From Piromyces finnis finn (Eukaryota > Fungi > Neocallimastigomycota): a stretch of DNA of 64,000 nucleotides. The notes under the pieces are model-generated. The model was not told where the DNA came from. It searched no databases and was given only the letters and a program-made list of their open reading frames with translations. Shown piece by piece: positions 2,376 through 21,604 of this stretch; the stretch's first letter is position 1, and each line of letters opens with the position of its first letter. The stretch is from the NCBI GenBank assembly GCA_002104945.1, contig MCFH01000038.1, forward strand, positions 124,001 to 188,000, in the 5' to 3' direction. The translations under genes were made by a program, and so were the position numbers.

Positions 2376-3837
2376 ATGTTTTTTTATTTAGCTTTGATTA
2401 CTTGCGTTATTGCATTTACTATAAACTTCGTTTTAAAGGGAAAACCAAATATTATTGATGATGAAAAAGTTTTAATTTTAGGTGCTTCTAGGTATTTAAT
2501 ATATTATTTAAACTATTTTTTTTTTTAAATATATATATATATAGCATTGCAATTATCAAAAATATTAAATTAGAAAATTACTCAAAGAAAAACACCTTTT
2601 TAATAATATATATAAAGCACAATTGCAATTCAATTAATATTAACAAAGAATAAAATTTATTAAGTATAATAACCAATTTTTTATAATTTTAAATATATAT
2701 ATATAAAAGTGGCATTGGTAAGCAAATTGCTTTACAATATGCTTCTCGTAATGCTAATATTATTTTAGCTGCTAGAAGAACTGAACTATTGGAACAAGTT
2801 AAAAAAGAATGTCTTGCTTTAGAAAAAACTAAAGTAGTTGAAGTCATTAAATGTGATATTACTAATGAAGATGATTTAATAGCTGTAGTTGAAAAGGTCA
2901 AAAAAGTTTTTGGAAAACTTAATACAGTCATTGTCAATGCTGGTATTTATTTATTGTTTGTTTATAGTCATTTAAAATACTAATTAAATGAATTTAGAAA
3001 TTTAAAAATTATATATATATTATTAATTTCAATATTAAATATATAATAAACTTTTTTAATATATATATGTAAACCTATATTTTTATTTATCATAAAGGTG
3101 TTATTAATGTTCTTTCTTTTGAAGATTTACTCAATAATGACAAAGGAATTCAAGGAAAAGACAGTGATTCCTCAAAAGCTATTGATAAAATATTTAAAAT
3201 TAATACCTATGGTTTGTAAAAAAAAATTTTTTTTTTTTTGAATCTTAATAATAATTCTAAAATTAACAAACTATGAAATATATATATATATATATTTTTT
3301 TTACAAGGTCCAATTTATGCTGCAAAATACTTTATTCCTCTTTTAAAAGAAACTCAAGGAAGATTTGTTGTTGTTTCATCTTTAGCTGCTTTAATTGCTG
3401 CTCCAACTCGTGCATTATATGCTTCTTCAAAACATGCTTTAATGGTAAATATATTTAAAAAAAAAGTGATTAAAATTATTTTATTTTTTAGCCAGAAAAA
3501 AAATAATTTTTTAAAATTTAAAATATATATATATTTTATTCAAATAGGGTTTCTTTAATTCATTAAGAATGGAACTTGCTGATACTGGTGTCTCTATTAC
3601 TTTAGTTTGTCCAGGCTCTGTATCTGATACTGATCTTCGTTCTTCTGCTATTGATAAGGCTTCTTCATCTGCAACTGATAATGCAACACCAGTTACTATT
3701 TCAGAAGATAAACCAAAGAAAGAAAAGAAATCATTATTCTCATTCCTCAAAATTACACCAGCTCAATGTGCTAAAGCTATAATTGAAGCTTCTGACTGTA
3801 AGAAAAAAAAAAAATTTTTTTTTATTTATATAGTATT

Positions 3838-3872
<35 letters not shown>

Positions 3873-4073
3873 AAATTTAATAAATATATATATATTATAT
3901 ATTATCTAATTCGAATCTTTTATAATTTAATGAATATATTTTTTTTTTTGTATGTAGGGAGAACAAAAGAAGTTGTTGTTCCAAGAGTATATAAGGTTGC
4001 TGTCTTAGCCAATTCTCTTGCTCCTTCACTTATTGAACTTGGTGCAAAATTAAAGTATCATTTTAAAAAATAA
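2376..4073 (+). CDS. Membrane-anchored short-chain dehydrogenase/reductase (11beta-HSD1/DHRS7-like), 6 exons
   Basis: N-terminal hydrophobic anchor, LILGASS/GIGKQIA (Rossmann GxxxGxG split by intron 1), VIVNAG, and YASSKHA (YxxxK). All introns are GT-AG. Confidence 0.9.
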
Positions 4074-6139
4074 ATGATTGTAATAGACAAAAAACAAAAA
4101 ACAAAAACCAAAAAACAAACAAGCAAACAAACAAAAAATAAATAAAAGATAATAGCATTTAAAAATTTCATCTATAAAAATAATAAATTAATTATTGATG
4201 GAAATAAGAAATTTTAGGATTAAATATAGCAACTCTATAATAATGCTCTATAGAAATATGAAAATATAATAATTAATGTTATTATTTTCATTACCAATAT
4301 TTATATTTTACTGATTATTATTATTTTTTTTTTATGAAACATTATTTTAGTATGATTATCAAGAATCTTTAAAAAGATACTTATTTTCACACTTTTATAC
4401 TTAACATTATTGTTAACTGTTAATAAAAATTAATATTAAAAAGTTAATATGTGATAGACATAATAATTAAGTATAGATAGACCTTATAGTAACTATTAAT
4501 AAGTTTAGTAAATGAAATGTTTTTCGTATTTCCATTTTTACTCTTTGAAGTTAAAATAGTATTAATTGAATGTTTGGTAAATAATATATACTATACATAT
4601 ATTATTATACTTATTAACAATATTTCATATATAAAATAATAAAGAACATTGTATATTGATTTCAATTAAGAATATTTATTTAGATTATAGATTATAATAA
4701 GAATATATAATATTAGAACACAAAGTACTCGTAGAAAAAGAATTATGTAAACCTATTTGTAAAAAAAATAAGTCAAGTTTGAATTTAGATTACAAGGATT
4801 ACAAATATATATTAACTTTGCCTTAATAATAATTGTATTTAAATCTTTAACTCGAGATTCTAATGTACACTTGATTCGGTTAAATGAGATGTACAAATTT
4901 GAAAGATATTAGTAACAATAACATTAAAAATTGATAAAATTACTTTTTATTCTCATTCCTCTTTATATTTTACTCTATATCTATATCTATATAGTTATTT
5001 TCACCTTTTAAAATGCTTCCTGATAATAATTTTGTAACAAACCTTGATAATTATTAAATTTTTTTATTATTTAGAATAACAACGTATATAAATATAATTT
5101 TGATATAAAGCCACAACATTTATTATTAATTAAAATCATTGTAATTTCTTTTTTTATTAAAAATAAATAATAAAAACAGAGCATATTATTATATTAAAAA
5201 AAAAAAAAAAAACCTTTTTATAGTTTAAACAACGATTTAAATTAAATTAGTACAATATATTCATTATTTATTTATAATAATACTTAATATTTAGCCACAA
5301 CAATATCCTACCAAATATTATTCTTAATTTTAAAGATATTTTTAATATATATGTTTCACTTATTATCCACTTATTTTGTAGAAATATTATTGGATTAAAT
5401 AAATTAAAAAAAAAAAAAAGTTGATTTGATTTTTATTAAACTCAACACTTTATTTTTTGAAAATAAAAAAAAAAAATATATAAAAAGAATGAATAGAATT
5501 TTCTTTTCTTTAATATGATCTTTAGTTAATAAATATTTAAAATCGATAATAAAAACAATATTCACCTTTTTTTTTTTTAAAAGGTGAAATATTAAGCTCT
5601 ACTTTTAATAATGTTAATTTTTTTTTTTTTTTTTGAATATCAATTTATATAAATTTAATAGTTTACTTTTCATTCATACACAAACCTTGATAAAAAGTTT
5701 AAACTTTTTTTTTAATATGGAAAAAGTTTTATTATTATTGAATTTTATAAACTATTTTAAATATTATGATTTTAAAATTTATTTTTTTTAGTTATTAATA
5801 ATTTTTAGATTAAGATAATGAATGTTTGATAATTTTTTTTTTTTTTTTTTGATAGTTTTAACTACATTTCAGAGAGTTAATATATACTATGATATTTTTT
5901 CATTATGCAATTTTATAATACAAATAACATTATTAAATTATTATTATTACTGTTATTATTGTTTTTGTTTTTTTTAATAATATCATTTTCTTTATTAGTG
6001 TTTTTTTTTGTTTTGTTTTTGTTTTAAAATAATGATAAAATAATGATAATAATAATAAAATTATTCTTTTGAAAAAACAAATAAAAAAATATTTAGATAG
6101 TCTTGGCTCTTGCATAATATAACTATTATTATTGTTGAT

Positions 6140-9100
6140 TTAGTAACGATAATATTTAATAGAACTGGTGAGTTGGGGAACATCAGCATTTTGTTTTTGA
6201 CGATTAGAAATGTTTTTCATGAGTTGCATAAAAAGTTTATTAGAACTAGCATAATATACAAAATCATGTTTTTTATTATCTTTAATATGGGTATCAGCAT
6301 TTTTAAGAATTAATAATTTTATCACTTGTTGATATCTTTCTATACGATGTCCATCCTCTATTTTGTTCATAATCTTTATAGCTTTCACAAGTGCTGTTTC
6401 TAAATGATTATTCTGAATATTACAATTAGCATGAAGATAAAGAAGGGATTTTACAATTTTTGGTTGGCCACTACGTGAGGCAATAATTAAAGCAGTATCA
6501 CCGTCATTATTAGTTTCATCTAAAGAAATAAAACTGTAGGGAAGAATAAGATCTTCGCATTGACGCATATTTAATTTGTTCTTTTTTCGAAGTGAAAGCG
6601 CCTTCACAATATTACGATTTGTGACATAAATACTAGAAAATTCTAATAATAATTGTGCCATATCTTCATGATGTGATAAACTAGATACCCACATTAATGC
6701 AGTATTGCCTTCTCCATTTTTCAAATTAATATCTGCATGATGGAATAAAAGTTGACGAACAATATCTTGATGATTATTAAAAGCTGAAATATGAAGAGCT
6801 GAATTACCTGCATTATTTCTAATATTAACATTTAAAGATTGGTTATTAAGAAATTCTTGAACAATGTCTGTGTATTCATATTTTTTCTGACATAGATATA
6901 TGAGTGCTGTATTTCCATTACGATCTTGTATATCCATATCAAGAGGTTGTTTTATAAGAATACGAATAATTTCTTCGTTAACGTGACGACAAGCAATAAT
7001 TAATGCTGTTTCACCTCTATTATTTTTGATATCTGTATTAGCACAATAACGCAAAAGTAATTGTATTGCCCTAACACAGCCATAACGAGAGGCTATAGTT
7101 AATGCAGTATCACCATTCTTATCTTGACGATTAACTCGAGCACGATTCTCCAATAACAAACGAATAATATCTATATTATCATTTTTGCAGGCTAACATTA
7201 ATGCGGTTAAACCATTATTATCTTGAAAATTAATATTAGAATGATATTCTAAAAGCTGCTTTACAATACCATCTTCTTGTTTTTCACATGAATACATTAA
7301 TGCTGTTTTACCGAGATAATCTCTGGTATTAACGCTCGTACCATATTTTAATAAAATTGGGACAACTTGTCTTAATTTATAAATACAAGCAATTATTAAT
7401 GAAGTACGACCATCTAAATCTTGAATATTAGGATCAGCATCATTCCAGAGAAGAGTTTCTAACATTGTTAAATACTTTGATGCTTTTTGACGAGTTGACT
7501 CGGTACCTGGTTGATCATTTTCATTTATTAGACCTTTATGGAAAGGAATATGTGATATAGTATTACGTTTTTGTCGATTAAGATCACTAGATAAAGTGCC
7601 AGTACCAGATGTGAAACCATTATATCCTGTAAATCCAACAATCTGGGATTGTTTTCTACTTTCCCTTATACCATTATATAATCTATTCGCTGGTGAGTAT
7701 CCAATTCTATTATATGGAGAAAATGGATGATAAGCTATATAACGGTTTTTGATTCGATTTGCATCTAATGTACTTAGCGTTTCAGATCGAGAAGGTTTTC
7801 TTAGCATAGTATCAATAGAAAAACTATCATATGGTATAATACTTTCGGAAAAGGATATATTATCAATTTCGTTTAAATTAATATTACTTTTGCTATAAAA
7901 ATCTCTTGTATAAAAGTCTCTCTTATTTTGGCTTTTCATTTCTAAGGGAAGACTTTCAAATTCAGAATAAGAACTTGAAAATGAATATGATTCGGAATCC
8001 GAGTAATAACTACTTCTTGTTTGAAAAGATTTTTTATCATCTTCATCATCAGATAATATAATAACATTAATATTATGACTATTATCTTCAAATGATTGTG
8101 ATTGAGGAAAATTATTTTTATCATTTACATTAGTAAATGGTTTCGTATCTGAAGTAATGTCAGAATTATTTTTATTATTATAATTTTCTGAATTTAAACC
8201 TGCATCTGAATGAGAAGTAGAATTCACTTCATTATTCATATAAGTAGTTGTGATAGTATTTATAGCATTACTATCATTAGTATTTGTGTTCGTGATAGAA
8301 TTAATTCTGGTGTTAGTATTTGTGTCGTTGTCAATGTTTACATCATTAATATTATTATTAATGTCGTTATTTTTTATGTTATTACTGGTATTTATATTAG
8401 GGTTATTATTATTATACGAATTTACATTTAATTCTTTGTTATCACTTGACTTACTTCTAGTAAATGTAAACTTACGTTGTAATTTTTTACTAAGATCACG
8501 CTTTGATATACCAACAGCATGAATACCTGGTGAAAATGTGAATTTGTGTTTAAGTTTTTTTTCACTTATTGAATCATTATTATTATTTGTAACAACTTCA
8601 ATGTTAGCGACAGTAGGAGTCCCTGATAATCTATTTGCATTAAATATATTATCATTTTTTTCGTTTGGTGAACCAACGTCTCTTAAGGTTATAGAACTAA
8701 CACTTGAACTTGAAAGAAGTGATGATGATGAACTACTTTTATTAATTTTTGTTTCTTTTATTCCTTTACCAATTTCTTTATTACAGTTTTTGTTGAACTC
8801 CTCTTCTAATGATGACTCGATTTCTAATGAACTGAACGAAATACTTTTAGATACCAGAAAATTTTTACGATTATTTGTTTCCGTTGCTGTTATTTTTGTT
8901 GTATTATCACTTTCATATGTATTACTATAACTACTACTACTATTAATATTACTATCATACTTCTTTTTAAGATTATTATTTGAAATATTTTTTCTTTTAA
9001 TAGTATTATTGGCTTCTAAATTATTGTTTTCATCTGAACAAGATAATGATTCTACTAATTTTATTACCGATTTTGAATTTGAAATTATATTTGATTTTGA

Positions 9101-10069
9101 TTCGTCAACATTGGTAGTACCTATCGTTTTATTTTTTAATTCCTCTGATTTTAAACTTATAATTTCATTATTTTCTGAATTTAAATTAGAATTGGTATTT
9201 TTTATGCTATTGTTTGAGGAATTTGAATTTGAATCTACATTTATAATTTCAGTTTCTTGTGAATTTAGATTGGATATTGGTATTTCAGTATTCTCTAGCG
9301 AATTTAAACATTCTTTTTTGTTACTTTCACTAGATTTATTGTTACTATTATTTTCATTTAATATTTCGTTCATAAGTTCATTAACATTAACATGGTTAAA
9401 TGAAATAGATAAGCTATCTAAATAATCTTCATCAACTTCTAATGAACCAGAATCGCCATTTTCAACCCAACTAAAATCACTACTTAAACTTATATCATTA
9501 AATAGACTTTCATCTTTCAATGTTTTCTTTTTTTGTATTTTTGATAGTATTTTATCTTCATTTGATTTTTTATTATTACTAGATTTACTTCGAGGTGCTG
9601 GTTCATTATCATCGGATGAAAAACTATCATCACCATTTATTGAAGAAGCGGTAGCAAACTTAATAATACTTTCATTTAAAACTTCATTGGGTATAGTATA
9701 TTTTTTAATAAGTTCAATAATTCTTATTAATGGAGTTTTACCGTATTTATCTTGTTCATTTACATTTATTTTATTTTCTATCAAAAGTTGTATTATATCT
9801 AAATTATATTTCTGTATAGCTAAATGTAAAGCACTTTCATTTTCTTTTGTTTTATAATTAATATTTAGTTTATTGTTTAGTAATAACCTTATAATTTCTT
9901 CTCTATTTCCTAATTTAATTGCTAATAAAAGTGGAGTATAACTATTCCTATTTTTATAATTTAAATTTATTGATTTTTTTGAATTTAATAAATGATTAAC
10001 ATATTCAATATTATTTTCTTCTACCGCTTGAATTAAACGTTTTTCTCTTGTATTGATAAACAAAGACAT
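6140..10069 (-). CDS. Intronless 1309-aa ankyrin-repeat protein (N-terminal and C-terminal ANK blocks separated by an S/N-rich linker)
   Basis: Single long ORF with many ANK consensus matches (YTPLLLAIKLG, GRTSLIIAC, GLTALMLAC, GDTALTIASRYG, GNSALHISAFNNH). Confidence 0.9.
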   Translation of the reverse strand: MSLFINTREKRLIQAVEENNIEYVNHLLNSKKSINLNYKNRNSYTPLLLAIKLGNREEIIRLLLNNKLNINYKTKENESALHLAIQKYNLDIIQLLIENKINVNEQDKYGKTPLIRIIELIKKYTIPNEVLNESIIKFATASSINGDDSFSSDDNEPAPRSKSSNNKKSNEDKILSKIQKKKTLKDESLFNDISLSSDFSWVENGDSGSLEVDEDYLDSLSISFNHVNVNELMNEILNENNSNNKSSESNKKECLNSLENTEIPISNLNSQETEIINVDSNSNSSNNSIKNTNSNLNSENNEIISLKSEELKNKTIGTTNVDESKSNIISNSKSVIKLVESLSCSDENNNLEANNTIKRKNISNNNLKKKYDSNINSSSSYSNTYESDNTTKITATETNNRKNFLVSKSISFSSLEIESSLEEEFNKNCNKEIGKGIKETKINKSSSSSSLLSSSSVSSITLRDVGSPNEKNDNIFNANRLSGTPTVANIEVVTNNNNDSISEKKLKHKFTFSPGIHAVGISKRDLSKKLQRKFTFTRSKSSDNKELNVNSYNNNNPNINTSNNIKNNDINNNINDVNIDNDTNTNTRINSITNTNTNDSNAINTITTTYMNNEVNSTSHSDAGLNSENYNNKNNSDITSDTKPFTNVNDKNNFPQSQSFEDNSHNINVIILSDDEDDKKSFQTRSSYYSDSESYSFSSSYSEFESLPLEMKSQNKRDFYTRDFYSKSNINLNEIDNISFSESIIPYDSFSIDTMLRKPSRSETLSTLDANRIKNRYIAYHPFSPYNRIGYSPANRLYNGIRESRKQSQIVGFTGYNGFTSGTGTLSSDLNRQKRNTISHIPFHKGLINENDQPGTESTRQKASKYLTMLETLLWNDADPNIQDLDGRTSLIIACIYKLRQVVPILLKYGTSVNTRDYLGKTALMYSCEKQEDGIVKQLLEYHSNINFQDNNGLTALMLACKNDNIDIIRLLLENRARVNRQDKNGDTALTIASRYGCVRAIQLLLRYCANTDIKNNRGETALIIACRHVNEEIIRILIKQPLDMDIQDRNGNTALIYLCQKKYEYTDIVQEFLNNQSLNVNIRNNAGNSALHISAFNNHQDIVRQLLFHHADINLKNGEGNTALMWVSSLSHHEDMAQLLLEFSSIYVTNRNIVKALSLRKKNKLNMRQCEDLILPYSFISLDETNNDGDTALIIASRSGQPKIVKSLLYLHANCNIQNNHLETALVKAIKIMNKIEDGHRIERYQQVIKLLILKNADTHIKDNKKHDFVYYASSNKLFMQLMKNISNRQKQNADVPQLTSSIKYYRY

Positions 10070-13510: not shown

Positions 13511-16251
13511 TTATAAAGAACAATAGGATGGAATACCACACCATTTTCCATTTTCAACACCCCAAGAACCTTCATCTGTAATAGCATAGACAGCACAACC
13601 TATACAACAGTTATATCCTTCTTTAAGAGACCAACATCCATTATTAGCAGCTGCATTTGAAAGAACGGAATATTTCTTACTGATTTCACTATAGGTGGAA
13701 ATACCACACCATGTCTTTTTAACGAAATCATAACCCCATTTTCCATCAACATCTTCAGCATAGACTTTTTCGAGAGATTCACCTTCACAACATGGATAAC
13801 CATGAACAGATACCCAACAGGTATCATCATCAGATTCATCACCTTTAATTTTTGAATTAATATTGGTATTAATATTTGAATTTTCTATAGTTAAATTTAT
13901 ATTAGAAGCAGAATCTACAGCTTGACTAGTACTAGCATTACTAACAGCAGTAGTTTCAGTAGTTATAGATACTGCATTATTATTACCTTCATCTTCTTCT
14001 AATTCATCGGCATCGTCTTTAGCTACATCTTCAAAACCAGCTTCTTCCTCTTCAGCTTCGGCTTCAAGATCGAAATCATTATTATCAGGATTTGAACAAT
14101 ATCTTACTTTATTTTGACATACACCTCCTTCTACACAAACGTTGTTAGTATCCATATAACAACTTTCAACTTCATCAGCAAGGTGAAGTTCACCCTTTAA
14201 ATTAGGATTGTTTGATACATCGCTGTTAAATTTAATTTTTGATACATTGATTATGCAAATGTATAATAATAAAAAGTTTTTAATCAAAATTATTATATCT
14301 TAGTTTTTTTATCAATTTATTTGCATTTAATGACTTTTTTATTTTTTTGTTTTCTAATCCTACTTACATATAACCTAAATAAGCTAATCTTTTAAGTGCC
14401 GTTGGAACACTACTAAATTTATTATTACTTAAATCGCTACACATAAAAAAATATTAAAAATCAATAAAAACATCATATTTCATAAATAATATATTAATAA
14501 CATTCAAACTTACAGGTAAACTAAATACTTTGATTTGGCAATGTTACTTGGGAAGTCACCAGTAAATTTATTACCAGCTAATGAACTATTATATTATAAT
14601 ATATTGTTTATTTTATGAAAAATATAGTAAATAATAAATATATAATTTTTTATTTTTTAAATCTATTAAGAACTTACAGCCATTCTAAATTTTGAAGGAA
14701 ACCAATGGATGATGGAATTTTGCCTTCAAACTTATTATTCGTTAAATCTCTGCATTTATTCATCGATAAAAATCACAAAAACAATTATAACAACAATTAA
14801 AAATCAATAATTGGAATTTCAAAGATTAAACACATATATAATCTATAAATTATTATATTTACAATTCAGATAATACTGAAAAGACACCAATATCTCTATC
14901 TAATCTACCAGTGAATTTATTATTATTGAAATATCTATTTTATAATGTAAATGTATATAAATATATAATTTTTATTAATGCATTACTATTTTAAAATTTT
15001 AAAATATTAAAAATAAATTAACGATGATAAATAAAATTTACCCATGTTCTAAAGTATACATATTATAAAATTCTTCTGGGAGATCTCCAGAAAATTGATT
15101 ATCTGATACATCACTATTTATATTGTTAAAAAAAAGAAAGGTTAATTTTTTGCCCCTTATTATTAATGCTTTGATTTTAAATTTATATATATATATATTT
15201 TTTTATTATTATTACAATGATTTAATGCTGAAAAGGTTGTCAAGAGAATGTGGAAGTTCACCGGATAACTGATTGGAATCAATAAACCTTAATGTTTAAA
15301 TATTGATGAGGTTAAATTTATACTGATATAAAGATTTTTTCTTTTTAATAATATCTACTACTTACAAGCCAGTTAAACTACCAATGTTTCCCAAAGATTC
15401 TGGGAATTCACCAGTTAAATTGTTTTTAGAAAGGGTTCTTTTTTATTTTTATTGGTATATAAAAATATTTTGTATTAATAGACTTTTTCCTCTATTATAT
15501 TAAATATATAAATTTGACTATTTTCTTACAATTCTTTTAAACTGCTTAAATTTTCAATATCCATTGGAATACTTCCAGTAAGAGCGTTATCACTTAAATT
15601 ACTTTTTTTATATCAAAAATTATATTTGTAATTAATAAACCTTTATATTTTAAAAAATTAGAATTTTTAAATATATATTACAGATATTCAAGTGAGGTTA
15701 ATGAAGTAATACAGGATGGAATTTCACCCATTAAACCATTATTCATAAGTTCTCTATAAAAAATAATAATAATAATTTTAATTATTAAGTTACTTTGAAT
15801 TGACTAATATTTTACTTTTAGCAATTGGATTAATTATTTACAATGATATTAATTCATTAAATTTGCAGAACTTTTCATTAATACGTTTATTTTCTAAATA
15901 TAAATTGGTTATATGTCTATTATTTTTGGAATATTATTTATATTTAATCAATAAATATAATAATAAAAATTAATAAATATACATTTAATTATCTTTTTTT
16001 TTTTTTTCTATTAGTGTTTTATATATATATTGAATAAATTACATTTTTATAATCTCGTTATTTTGATTGCAGTTAATAATTACTGGGTATTCAAAATCTT
16101 TATAAGCAGTACAACAATCATTTGTTCCTAAATTCCAGTATACGTCTATTCCATAATCTAAAAATATTTCACTTAAAGTGTTACAATCTTGTGCCGATAC
16201 AACACCACCAAGAATAGTTAAACCTGATAATAATAAAATGTTAAATAACAT
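13511..16251 (-). CDS. Secreted leucine-rich-repeat protein with two C-terminal fungal dockerin (NCDD/CBM10-like) domains, 12 exons, ~546 aa
   Basis: Exon 1 (16251-16043) encodes a signal peptide and a Cys N-cap (DCC...C). Ten phase-2 exons (75, 8x72 and 69 nt) encode LxLxxNxLxGxIP repeats. The last exon (14222-13511) has a Cys cap, acidic and S/T linkers, CWVSVHGYPCC...WGY...WCGI and CWSLKEGYNCC...WGVENGKWCGI. The spliced total of 1641 nt is in frame. Confidence 0.85.
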
Positions 16252-19810: not shown

Positions 19811-21604
19811 ATGTCTCCGGAAGCTCCTTTACAATCCTTTCCACCAGTTTCTTCTACATTAAATTCAAGAAATCCTTTGGGTTATAATTTTGTATTAAAA
19901 GACTCGAATGCACCTTTCTACGGAAATCCAAGATATGATCTGTTACCTCAATCTCCAAATAATTTAGTATATCCATACTATTCTAATTTATATACAAACA
20001 GTAGTCTCTATCCATCAACGAATTACATAATGAATAATAGAAGTAATTTTATGGAAATGAAAAATCCTCTTCCATTGCTAAATAATTCAGTTAACCCATT
20101 TATTATAAAAGAAAGTCTCGCCAATCCTTTTGAAAATTTGTTAAGCTCACCTACTTGTCCTCCGGTTTTGAAAAGAAATCCATTATTATCAAATGAACTA
20201 AACTCACCTATTTGTCCTCCGGTCTCGAAAAGAAATCCTTTATTATCAAATGAATTAAACTCACCTACTTGTCCTCCGGTCTCGAAAAGAAATCCTTTAT
20301 TATCAAATGAATTTCATAGTAATGCTGAAATAAATAATACTGGGATAGTAAGTCCTATAATACTTTCTGAAACCAGAAATAATGTAAATTTAATTAAGAA
20401 AAAAGAAAAAGAACAACTAAAATATATATCTCCAATAATGTCAGAAAATATCAAGAATTTCGAAAAGAAAAAAAATGGAAATTTTGAATCTTTAACAAAT
20501 TATGAAAAACAATTATCAATTGAGGTTAGAAAAAAAGTAAATCAATTAAAAAATAGAACAAAAAAAGAAAGGCTAGAAAACAATATAAAGAAGGAGAATG
20601 ATTTAATTTATAATATAAATCAAAAATCAAAACAATACTATTATCCAATAAACACTAATAAAATTAAAAAAAATGTAAAAATACTTTTTTGATTATTGAC
20701 ATAATGTTTTTTTGAATTATAGTTAATTGAAAAAATACTAACATTTTAAAATTTATAATTTTATATATATGCTATTATAGTCATTCTCTAATTTGCCGCT
20801 AAAAGGTTCCTTTTCGATAATAGAAAACTCTAGTCCAGTACTAAACAACACCTACTCACCTTCATTAATTAGTACACCTTTACTTAATTCACCATGTTCA
20901 TCATCAAAATCATTTTCATATGATGATATCGCCTCTAATTCCACTTTCTCTGACGACCATCAGTATCAATCGTGTTTATGTTCAACTATATATTCAACTC
21001 CAAATACAAATTTGAATACAGCGATATGTTCAACCCCAAATACAAATTTGGATACAACTATATGTTCAACTCTAAATTCAAATTCAAATCATTGTGAAAG
21101 TCCAGCTGCTAGTGTAAGTTCTTCATGTTCAGACTCAATCTCTACTGTTATTAATATCTCACTTAACAAAAAACCCAAAAGAAGAGGCGGAAACTCAAAA
21201 GGTCGTAAACGCCCAAATCATCCTCACAAGGTTACAAGAATATTAAAGGAATGGCTTGCTAATAATTCATACCCTTATCCTTCTAATACTGAAAAGAGTC
21301 GTCTTTGCGACGCTACTGGTCTAACAATGGTAAGAAATTTATTATTAATATTAATTATTTTATAAAATAAATGTATAGGTCTATATTAACAATATTTCTT
21401 ATTATATTTTCCATTACATAATACAAATGTATTTAAATAATTAAATATTAATTATATTAGACTCAGGTATATATTTTAAGTAATTCTAAATTATTAATTA
21501 TAATAATATTTATTAGTACTACTTTACTAATTATTAATTATATACCAATTTAATAACTATAGCTCAATAACTGGTTCATAAATGCTAGACGCCGTTATAT
21601 ATAA
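19811..21604 (+). CDS. TALE-class homeodomain transcription factor with a C-terminal homeodomain; exons 19811-20674, 20781-21329, 21461-21466, 21563-21604
   Basis: [57 protein letters not shown]. PYP and WFINARRR are TALE hallmarks. All splice sites are GT-AG and in frame. Confidence 0.85.
20147..20313 (+). repeat. Coding tandem repeat, 57 bp (19 aa) x3, in the homeobox gene
   Basis: SP(T/I)CPPV(L/S)KRNPLLSNE occurs three times with near-identical nucleotide sequence. Confidence 0.9.

What the first reader, a model, noticed from the sequence alone, without database searches (positions are those of the whole stretch)
13511..16251. Non-catalytic cellulosome-type component: plant-type extracellular LRR solenoid fused to two dockerins
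Seen: signal peptide, Cys N-cap, ~10-11 LRRs of the 24-aa LxLxxNxLxGxIP class, a Cys C-cap, acidic and S/T linkers and two fungal dockerins, with no catalytic domain. Known: fungal dockerins tether proteins to the scaffoldins of anaerobic-fungal cellulosomes, and this LRR class is typical of plant receptors and PGIP-type inhibitors. Inference: a cellulosome-displayed binding or decoy protein, possibly recognising plant defence or inhibitor proteins, proteases or partner microbes. I cannot verify whether this architecture has already been catalogued.
Basis: partly seen in the sequence, partly recalled or inferred. Interest (0 to 1): 0.7.

Follow-up and report, generated by a model that had tools for sequence, protein, structure and literature searches.

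The report
LRR protein docked to fungal cellulosome
This is a real, intron-rich gene of the gut fungus Piromyces finnis for a secreted, non-enzymatic leucine-rich-repeat protein with two cellulosome-docking modules; it is conserved across gut-fungal genera and already catalogued, but nobody knows what it binds.

Summary
Window 13511-16251 (minus strand) holds a 12-exon, 546-aa gene. It encodes a signal peptide, a 4-Cys N-cap, 11 LRR units (9 canonical 24-aa plant-type repeats, one per 72-nt exon), a 4-Cys C-cap, an acidic linker, an N/S/T linker and two CBM10 fungal dockerins. The last LRR, the C-cap and both dockerins share one exon, so the fusion does not depend on the splicing model.

An orthologous locus keeps all 22 splice sites. 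mRNA-like metatranscriptome contigs read straight through every junction.

The architecture is already catalogued:
- The protein is NCBI "L domain-like protein [Piromyces finnis]".
- It is constructs Celsome_114/155 of mBio 2025 (PMC12421816).
- That paper's Table 1 lists a paralogue as "Leucine-rich repeat, CBM10, CBM10".

Orthologues exist in Anaeromyces and Neocallimastix.

The LRR part is under purifying selection (dN/dS 0.16). Its concave face is more conserved than its convex side, the opposite of an arms-race receptor or decoy. My best reading is a cellulosome-tethered binding module for a conserved, still unknown ligand. The PGIP-like decoy idea is not excluded but is weakened.

Other agents of this scan noted the same one-LRR-per-exon family elsewhere in this genome.

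The parts
16043..16251 (-). Exon 1: start codon, signal peptide (aa 1-20, cleavage probably after VSA) and 4-Cys N-cap (C23, C46, C47, C61)
   Evidence: The motif C..W..CC..C is invariant in 7 orthologues and 3 paralogues. Pfam has no match.
15842..15916 (-). Exon 2 (75 nt): irregular first LRR unit, with a conserved Cys87
   Evidence: It is conserved in L018 at the same splice sites.
15682..15753 (-). Exon 3 (72 nt): LRR
15530..15601 (-). Exon 4 (72 nt): LRR
   Evidence: (LRR_1 E=0.032)
15366..15437 (-). Exon 5 (72 nt): LRR
15216..15287 (-). Exon 6 (72 nt): LRR
15042..15113 (-). Exon 7 (72 nt): LRR
14863..14934 (-). Exon 8 (72 nt): LRR, with Asp in place of the usual Pro
14678..14749 (-). Exon 9 (72 nt): LRR
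14514..14585 (-). Exon 10 (72 nt): LRR
14368..14436 (-). Exon 11 (69 nt): LRR lacking the Gly
13511..14222 (-). Exon 12: last LRR unit, C-cap, linkers, two dockerins and the stop codon, all in one open frame
   Evidence: One uninterrupted ORF physically joins the LRR end to the dockerins.
14093..14173 (-). 4-Cys C-cap (aa 327-353; C331, C339, C345, C352)
   Evidence: All four Cys are invariant in 8 homologues. The same C-x6-N-[IV]-C pattern appears in paralogues L012 and L014.
13985..14092 (-). Acidic linker (aa 354-389, 53% D/E)
   Evidence: It is partly conserved in L018 and P0025.
13841..13984 (-). N/S/T-rich linker (aa 390-437). The NCBI model (498 aa, = Celsome_114) removes it as a 144-nt in-frame GT-AG intron at 13843-13986.
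   Evidence: The frame is open here and in the orthologue.
13688..13825 (-). Fungal dockerin 1 (CBM10)
13514..13642 (-). Fungal dockerin 2 (CBM10)
   Evidence: It matches P. equi Cel45A dockerins 2J4M (E=1.5e-10) and 1E8P.

Best explanation
The gene encodes a secreted, non-catalytic subunit of the Piromyces finnis cellulosome.

How it probably works:
1. After signal-peptide cleavage, the C-terminal tandem CBM10 dockerins plug into cohesin repeats of the fungal scaffoldin. This step is inferred from the family.
2. A flexible acidic plus N/S/T linker holds out a disulfide-capped, PGIP-sized solenoid of 11 plant-type LRRs.
3. The conserved concave face of the solenoid binds a specific ligand that is the same across gut-fungal genera. 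The ligand is inferred and its identity is unknown. It is most likely a protein or peptide, or possibly a cell-wall polymer.

The protein would therefore act as a recognition or adaptor module. It would bring a partner to the cellulosome, or the cellulosome to a partner, rather than serve as an enzyme or a fast-evolving decoy.

Shown here: the gene structure, the domain architecture, the physical fusion, conservation in at least 3 genera, and purifying selection on the concave face.

Inferred: secretion, scaffoldin binding, and ligand binding by the concave face.
For: - Gene model and one-exon fusion of last LRR, C-cap and dockerins.
- Two CBM_10 modules. They match the solved P. equi double dockerin 2J4M/1E8P, with the GY Tyr, the TD/ED Asp and the WCGI Trp present in both modules. 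That these residues are important is recalled from Raghothama et al. 2001.
- A P. finnis C-terminal double dockerin is enough to attach foreign enzymes to native P. finnis cellulosomes. Double dockerins are the commonest arrangement (PMC7015840).
- The LRR domain folds confidently: pLDDT 83-98 over residues 21-350. It matches only plant LRR ectodomains in the top 50.
- Orthologues with the identical architecture occur in Anaeromyces robustus, Neocallimastix lanati and several metatranscriptomes.
- Purifying selection: dN/dS 0.16 with 85% aa identity in the LRRs against the L018 orthologue.
- Concave positions are no more variable than the rest in that pair (6/45 vs 23/170). Across 8 homologues they are significantly more conserved than convex or loop positions (0.67 vs 1.29 bits, p=1.1e-4).
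- Relatives in the same genome carry the same LRR type on other anchors: a TM helix (L012), a probable chitin-binding module (L016), and dockerins again in a paralogue (L014).
Against: - No ligand is known.
- There is no direct evidence here that this protein is in the cellulosome fraction or binds scaffoldin. I could not read Haitjema et al. 2017.
- Constructs of this protein (Celsome_114/155) were made, but they were not among the 17 soluble proteins studied.
- The conservation analysis rests on 8 sequences.
- The dockerins were poorly modelled (pLDDT <50).
Confidence: 0.55

Rival explanations
1. PGIP-like inhibitor or decoy. The cellulosome-tethered LRR solenoid binds and neutralises plant defence or inhibitor proteins, plant or microbial enzymes, or proteases, and so protects the complex.
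For: - PGIP is the best size-matched structural neighbour (8ikw_A, TM 0.82 by target).
- Inhibitor-type passengers do ride on fungal dockerins. Serpin+CBM10 proteins were among the hits (P0006, P0013, P0015).
Against: - The concave-face residues are conserved, not diversified, and dN/dS is 0.16. Targets in an arms race usually leave hypervariable xxLxLxx positions.
- There is no closer kinship to PGIP than to plant LRR ectodomains in general. PGIP is absent from the best 60 sequence matches and ranks 32 in Foldseek.
Confidence: 0.2
2. Substrate or cell-wall adhesin. The LRR face binds a plant or fungal cell-wall polymer and helps position the cellulosome on fibre.
For: - The conserved concave face is rich in Tyr/Trp/His and Asp/Glu/Asn.
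- Lysate containing the paralogue Celsome_082 gave a weak positive on carboxymethyl cellulose in a DNS assay (PMC12421816, Table 2).
Against: - LRR solenoids of this class are known chiefly as protein or peptide binders.
- The DNS result is lysate-level, at 90% confidence, for a protein without a catalytic fold. It concerns the paralogue, not this gene.
Confidence: 0.12
3. Not cellulosomal. The CBM10 modules act as cellulose-binding modules or bind other glycoproteins, so the protein is a free secreted or wall-bound LRR protein.
For: Pfam describes CBM_10 as a 'cellulose or protein binding domain'. Bacterial CBM10 modules bind cellulose.
Against: - The modules match the fungal dockerin structures 2J4M/1E8P.
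- They occur as the typical C-terminal tandem pair.
- The genome holds more than 200 such modules, largely on long open reading frames typical of dockerin-bearing proteins.
Confidence: 0.08
4. Gene-model artefact. The LRR exons and the dockerin exon belong to separate genes.
For: None was found. The only model uncertainty is the optional 144-nt in-frame intron in the linker.
Against: - The last LRR unit, the C-cap and both dockerins lie in one ORF.
- The orthologue keeps all 22 splice sites.
- mRNA-like contigs of homologues are contiguous from signal peptide to dockerins.
Confidence: 0.02

Closest known systems
P. finnis paralogue Celsome_082 / UniProt A0A1Y1VM89 (PMC12421816, Table 1: 'Leucine-rich repeat, CBM10, CBM10')
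   Same: - Same genome (G000:C156, locus L014).
- Same architecture: signal peptide, Cys N-cap, plant-type LRRs mostly one per 72-nt exon, and a last exon holding the last LRR, the C-cap and two CBM10 dockerins.
   Different: - It is a diverged paralogue. Only the dockerins of its last exon match ours.
- It has no acidic linker.
- It was soluble in E. coli and was modelled in that paper, whereas this gene's constructs (Celsome_114/155) were not taken further.
Plant LRR receptor ectodomains and PGIP (e.g. FLS2 4MN8, ERL1/TMM 5XJO, PGIP 8IKW)
   Same: - 24-aa LxxLxLxxNxLxGxIPxx repeats.
- About 40% identity, ungapped, over 200 residues to FLS2.
- All top 50 fold matches are of this kind.
- PGIP-like size, with a Cys-capped solenoid.
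   Different: - The protein is fungal.
- No plant LRRNT_2 domain is detectable.
- It has its own 4-Cys C-cap type.
- It has no TM helix or kinase, and dockerins take their place.
- The concave face is conserved rather than hypervariable.
LRR-dockerin proteins of bacterial cellulosomes (Ruminococcus flavefaciens FD-1; PMC2930009)
   Same: - SIGN-LRR-Doc architecture.
- 28 LRR modules occur among 222 dockerin sequences.
- They are non-catalytic cellulosome passengers of unknown function in a gut fibre degrader.
   Different: - Bacterial dockerins are a different, unrelated fold family from fungal CBM10 dockerins, so this is an analogue and not a homologue.
- The bacterial LRR type was not compared here.
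Celpin-type serpin-dockerin proteins of anaerobic fungi
   Same: They are non-CAZyme, protein-binding passengers carried on CBM10 dockerins (PF00079+PF02013 hits).
   Different: The fold and mechanism differ. A serpin inhibits proteases as a suicide substrate, which an LRR does not.

Membership tests
Fungal dockerin-domain protein (DDP) of the anaerobic-fungal cellulosome | One or more CBM10-type fungal dockerins with the conserved Cys pattern and the Tyr/Asp/Trp positions | tested here: met
   CBM_10 occurs twice, above the gathering score. It aligns to P. equi dockerins 2J4M/1E8P, with GY, TD/ED and WCGI present in both modules.
Fungal dockerin-domain protein (DDP) of the anaerobic-fungal cellulosome | N-terminal secretion signal | tested here: met
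   Tested by inspection only, as no predictor was available. Residues 5-18 form a hydrophobic core and VSA precedes Q21. A hydrophobic N-terminus is kept in all 7 full-length orthologues.
Fungal dockerin-domain protein (DDP) of the anaerobic-fungal cellulosome | Binds scaffoldin (ScaA) cohesin repeats or is found in the purified cellulosome | not testable with these tools
   This needs proteomics or a binding assay. The primary catalogue paper (Haitjema 2017) is not held.
Plant-specific (PS) class of extracellular LRRs | Tandem 24-residue repeats with the consensus LxxLxLxxNxLxGxIPxx | tested here: met
   Alignment of the exons. The repeat profile hits FLS2 at 2.7e-104, followed by other plant receptor kinases. 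The whole protein gives 7.8e-116 to FLS2.
Plant-specific (PS) class of extracellular LRRs | Plant-type N-terminal cap (Pfam LRRNT_2, PF08263) | tested here: not met
   There is no Pfam hit on exon 1 or on P0023. An N-cap profile of 10 fungal sequences finds nothing in the PDB at E<=10. Only a motif-level resemblance exists (C..W..CC..C).
PGIP (polygalacturonase-inhibiting protein) | A roughly 10-repeat capped LRR solenoid of about 310 residues | tested here: met
   Foldseek 8ikw_A: E=1.1e-13, TM 0.82 normalised by PGIP.
PGIP (polygalacturonase-inhibiting protein) | Closer sequence kinship to PGIPs than to other plant-type LRRs | tested here: not met
   PGIP is not among the best 60 PDB sequence matches. 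Receptor-kinase ectodomains rank above it in both searches.
PGIP (polygalacturonase-inhibiting protein) | Inhibits polygalacturonase | not testable with these tools
   This needs a biochemical assay.
Bacterial LRR-dockerin cellulosome proteins | Bacterial-type dockerin | tested here: not met
   Pfam finds only CBM_10 in the C-terminal part. The resemblance is one of architecture only.

The most novel reading that the evidence does not exclude
Anaerobic-fungal cellulosomes carry a dedicated, genus-spanning receptor subunit. It would be a plant-type LRR module whose invariant concave face recognises one specific plant-derived or microbial molecule, for example a plant wall protein, a plant enzyme inhibitor or a partner microbe's surface protein. 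Substrate or partner recognition would then be coupled directly to the enzyme complex. It would have been drawn from a large fungal family of LRR genes built from 72-nt phase-2 exons and displayed on interchangeable anchors (TM helix, chitin-binding module, dockerin).
Probability: 0.15. Interest if true: 0.7.

Novelty: already known. Interest (0 to 1): 0.35.

Why it matters
About a fifth of fungal cellulosome passengers have no assigned role. An LRR binder conserved from Piromyces to Neocallimastix, and mirrored by unrelated LRR-dockerin proteins in rumen bacteria, suggests that cellulosomes do more than hydrolyse. They may also recognise, recruit or shield. Finding the ligand would add a functional class to the fungal cellulosome parts list. 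It would also give a natural, swappable binding module for designer cellulosomes. As a sequence feature, however, the gene and its architecture are already public, so the value lies in the untested function and not in the discovery of the gene.

Tried and rejected
- **Pfam on single 23-aa LRR exons.** It gave only sub-threshold LRR_1 hits. The issue was resolved with the repeat profile and the database protein P0023.
- **Exon 1 against Pfam and an N-cap profile against the PDB.** Nothing was found, so homology of the N-cap to plant LRRNT_2 is not shown.
- **The C-cap part of exon 12 in the own genome.** It has no paralogue match; only the dockerins repeat.
- **LRR arrays near dockerins on C1 (L015) and C197 (L016).** I suspected further LRR-dockerin genes. 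I rejected this because the dockerin ORFs there start with their own signal peptides, 2.5-4 kb away.
- **Haitjema et al. 2017.** It could not be read, so proteomic detection in the cellulosome is unverified.
- **Literature searches** for 'L domain-like' + dockerin and for Neocallimastigomycota + leucine-rich repeat found no dedicated study.
- **Origin of the LRR (plant or bacterial transfer versus vertical descent).** I left this open. After the gut-fungal orthologues, the next hits are plant receptor-like proteins and bacterial secreted LRR proteins at similar identity, and repeat proteins make poor trees.
- **The joined 546-aa model.** I never sent it to a search tool. Exons were searched by reference, and whole-protein searches used P0023.
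Full report
**What is there**

The window is 20% G+C. It is G000:C165:124001-188000 of a 56.46-Mb, 232-contig genome. The encoded protein is identical to NCBI 'L domain-like protein [Piromyces finnis]' apart from one linker segment, so the organism is the anaerobic gut fungus Piromyces finnis.

On the minus strand between 16251 (ATG) and 13511 (end of the stop codon) I built a 12-exon model.
- All 11 introns are GT-AG, 77-145 nt long and phase 2.
- Exons 3-10 are exactly 72 nt, exon 2 is 75 nt and exon 11 is 69 nt.

**How the spliced model was handled**

Exons were searched one by one by reference, and the joined-model search step was left out. Inside scripts the joined translation was used only for anatomy and for pairwise comparison with the orthologue. 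Whole-protein searches used P0023. The word search returned this database protein, and it equals my model minus 48 linker residues.

**Anatomy**

| Residues | Feature |
|---|---|
| 1-20 | Hydrophobic signal peptide ending VSA |
| 21-69 | N-cap with four Cys (23, 46, 47, 61) in a C..W..CC..C motif, invariant in seven orthologues and three paralogues |
| 70-333 | Eleven LRR units: nine canonical 24-mers, an irregular first unit, and a last unit that runs into the cap |
| 327-353 | C-cap with four Cys invariant in all eight homologues |
| 354-389 | Acidic linker, 53% D/E |
| 390-437 | N/S/T linker |
| 443-486 and 503-546 | Two CBM10 dockerins |

No catalytic domain is found.

Domain scores:
- CBM_10 x2: E=2.6e-14 on exon 12 and 2.9e-12 on P0023.
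- On P0023, LRR_1 scores 1.2e-25, LRR_8 1.3e-18, LRR_14 1e-15 and LRR_4 8e-12, all above the gathering scores.
- The dockerin pair matches the solved P. equi Cel45A double dockerin 2J4M (1.5e-10) and 1E8P.

**Is the fusion real?**

Three lines of evidence say yes.
1. The last LRR unit, the C-cap, the linkers and both dockerins lie in one open frame (ORF 13511-14287).
2. A 14.9-kb metagenome contig (L018) carries an orthologue with all 12 exons and AG/GT at the same positions. Exons are 76-92% identical, while introns are 38-56% identical, close to background for such A+T-rich DNA.
3. A homologue (P0025, 57% identical) sits on three independent ~1.7-kb contigs, each with an unbroken 508-aa ORF and A/T-rich ends, so they are mRNA assemblies. 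It shows no indel at any of the 11 predicted junctions. A 350-aa partial transcript (P0003) likewise runs from LRRs through the C-cap into the dockerins.

**What kind of LRR**

- A profile of the nine canonical exon-repeats hits plant receptor-kinase ectodomains first in the PDB (FLS2 2.7e-104, then GSO1, MIK2 and PEPR1). Leptospira LRR proteins and SHOC2 fall far behind.
- P0023 aligns without gaps to FLS2 over about 200 residues (single-stretch E 1e-32).
- An AlphaFold model from an 8-sequence alignment is confident over the LRR domain (pLDDT 83-98 for residues 21-350). It is not confident over the linkers and dockerins.
- All 50 best Foldseek matches are plant LRR ectodomains. The best size match is PGIP (8ikw_A, TM 0.82 by target), followed by TMM.
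- The plant N-cap family LRRNT_2 is not detected.
- The C-cap pattern (C-x6-N-[IV]-C...) is shared with other P. finnis LRR proteins and differs from the plant cap pattern as I recall it, which was not tested here.

**Already catalogued?**

Yes. File S1 of Jin et al., mBio 2025 (PMC12421816) lists this exact protein twice among 173 synthesised P. finnis 'celsome' constructs. Celsome_155 is the full form, and Celsome_114 lacks the N/S/T linker, like the NCBI model. The set was collated from dockerin-fused and transcriptionally up-regulated proteins of earlier studies. Neither construct was among the 17 soluble proteins examined.

A paralogue, Celsome_082 / A0A1Y1VM89, was examined. Table 1 of that paper annotates it 'Leucine-rich repeat, CBM10, CBM10', with best fold match 5XJO. 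I located that paralogue at G000:C156 (L014). It has the same build, including 72-nt LRR exons and a last exon with the last LRR, the C-cap and two dockerins.

In bacteria, SIGN-LRR-Doc proteins are abundant in Ruminococcus flavefaciens FD-1 (28 LRR modules, PMC2930009). I found no paper that studies the fungal LRR-dockerin proteins as such.

**Distribution and selection**

Full-length proteins with the same architecture exist in three places:
- Anaeromyces robustus (P0019, 483 aa);
- Neocallimastix lanati (P0020, 490 aa);
- several metatranscriptomes (P0021, P0022, P0024, P0025).

They are 54-63% identical to the P. finnis protein.

Against the L018 orthologue, the LRR part is 85% identical with dN/dS 0.16. 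The solvent-exposed concave positions (the x of xxLxLxx) are no more variable than the rest in that pair (6/45 vs 23/170). Across eight homologues they are clearly more conserved than convex or loop positions (mean entropy 0.67 vs 1.29 bits, Mann-Whitney p=1.1e-4) and nearly as conserved as the structural core (0.51). The conserved face is rich in Tyr/Trp/His and Asp/Glu/Asn.

This pattern is the reverse of what I recall for plant immune receptors and PGIPs, whose concave faces are hypervariable.

**Mechanism**

The best-supported reading is a cellulosome-docked recognition or adaptor subunit.
- The dockerins anchor it. This is inferred from the family. A P. finnis C-terminal double dockerin suffices to load foreign enzymes onto native cellulosomes (PMC7015840).
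- The linkers act as spacers.
- The conserved concave face binds one conserved ligand.

Relatives in the same genome carry the same LRR type on a TM helix (L012) or next to a chitin-binding module (L016). This fits the view that the LRR is the working part and the anchor is exchangeable.

The conservation pattern weakens it. A carbohydrate-adhesin role and a non-cellulosomal role for the CBM10 pair are minor rivals.

**Context**

The neighbours are unrelated: an ankyrin-repeat protein at 6140-10069 and a Ser/Pro-rich protein at 19811-21365. No other LRR or dockerin lies in the window.

**Verdict**

The feature is real and accurately described, and its architecture is already in public catalogues. 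The function is unknown.
- the comparative validation of the gene model;
- the orthologue group spanning three genera;
- the conserved concave face;
- the link to a genome-wide family of 72-nt phase-2 LRR exons.

Other agents of this scan also noted that family on other pieces of this genome (s1-185380, s1-176515).

Noticed in passing
G000-wide; e.g. L017 = G000:C177:240001-249000 (minus strand, 2667-5313), L015, L016, L014: The genome holds a large family of plant-type LRR genes built from arrays of exactly 72-nt exons. Each exon encodes one LRR and is flanked by phase-2 GT-AG introns of about 80-110 nt. The repeat profile gave 624 first-look candidates. All 150 scored had E<=0.01, and nearly all lay in open frames of only 25-70 aa. 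L017 has about 17 consecutive such exons. Comparable 72-bp phase-2 LRR exons are described in brown-alga ROCO genes (PMC11378527), and 90-bp ones in Tetrahymena (PMC6564038). I found no paper describing this for gut fungi.
   Followed up: partly
L016 = G000:C197:88001-97000, minus strand: LRR exons 6008-7382, ORF 5441-5653: A Chitin_bind_1 (hevein-type) module (E=2.8e-7) lies about 350 nt downstream of an LRR exon array on the same strand. It is probably an LRR protein with a chitin anchor. I did not prove that both belong to one gene.
   Followed up: partly
L012:1150-2679 (+) = G000:C156:155389-156918: This is an intronless 509-aa relative. It has an Asn/Gln-rich repeat region, the same C..W..CC..C N-cap, LRRs, a Cys C-cap, one TM helix and a short tail, which makes it a receptor-like protein without a kinase.
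   Followed up: partly
window 13843-13986 (minus strand): This is a 144-nt in-frame GT-AG segment inside exon 12. The NCBI model and Celsome_114 splice it out (498 aa), while Celsome_155 retains it (546 aa). It has no stop codon here, and the orthologue's longer linker is also open, so it is coding in at least one isoform.
   Followed up: partly
window 13985-14092 (aa 354-389) and the same region of L018 and P0025: The acidic linker just after the C-cap (NDFD.EAE.EE.AGFED..DDA.E) is partly conserved in the Piromyces-like orthologues. It is absent from the Anaeromyces and Neocallimastix proteins. Its role is unknown.
   Followed up: no
PMC12421816, Table 2 (paralogue Celsome_082, locus L014): The LRR + 2xCBM10 paralogue, which has no catalytic fold, is listed as experimentally active on cellulose in a lysate DNS assay. 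dbCAN predicted 'xylan' from its dockerins. This looks like noise or an indirect effect and deserves a purified-protein control.
   Followed up: no
window 6140-10069 (-) and 19811-21365 (+): The neighbouring genes are a 1309-aa ankyrin-repeat protein and a Ser/Pro/Asn-rich protein with repeated 'CPPVSKRNPLLSNE' units followed by a second ORF. They are unrelated to cellulosomes, so there is no gene cluster.
   Followed up: no
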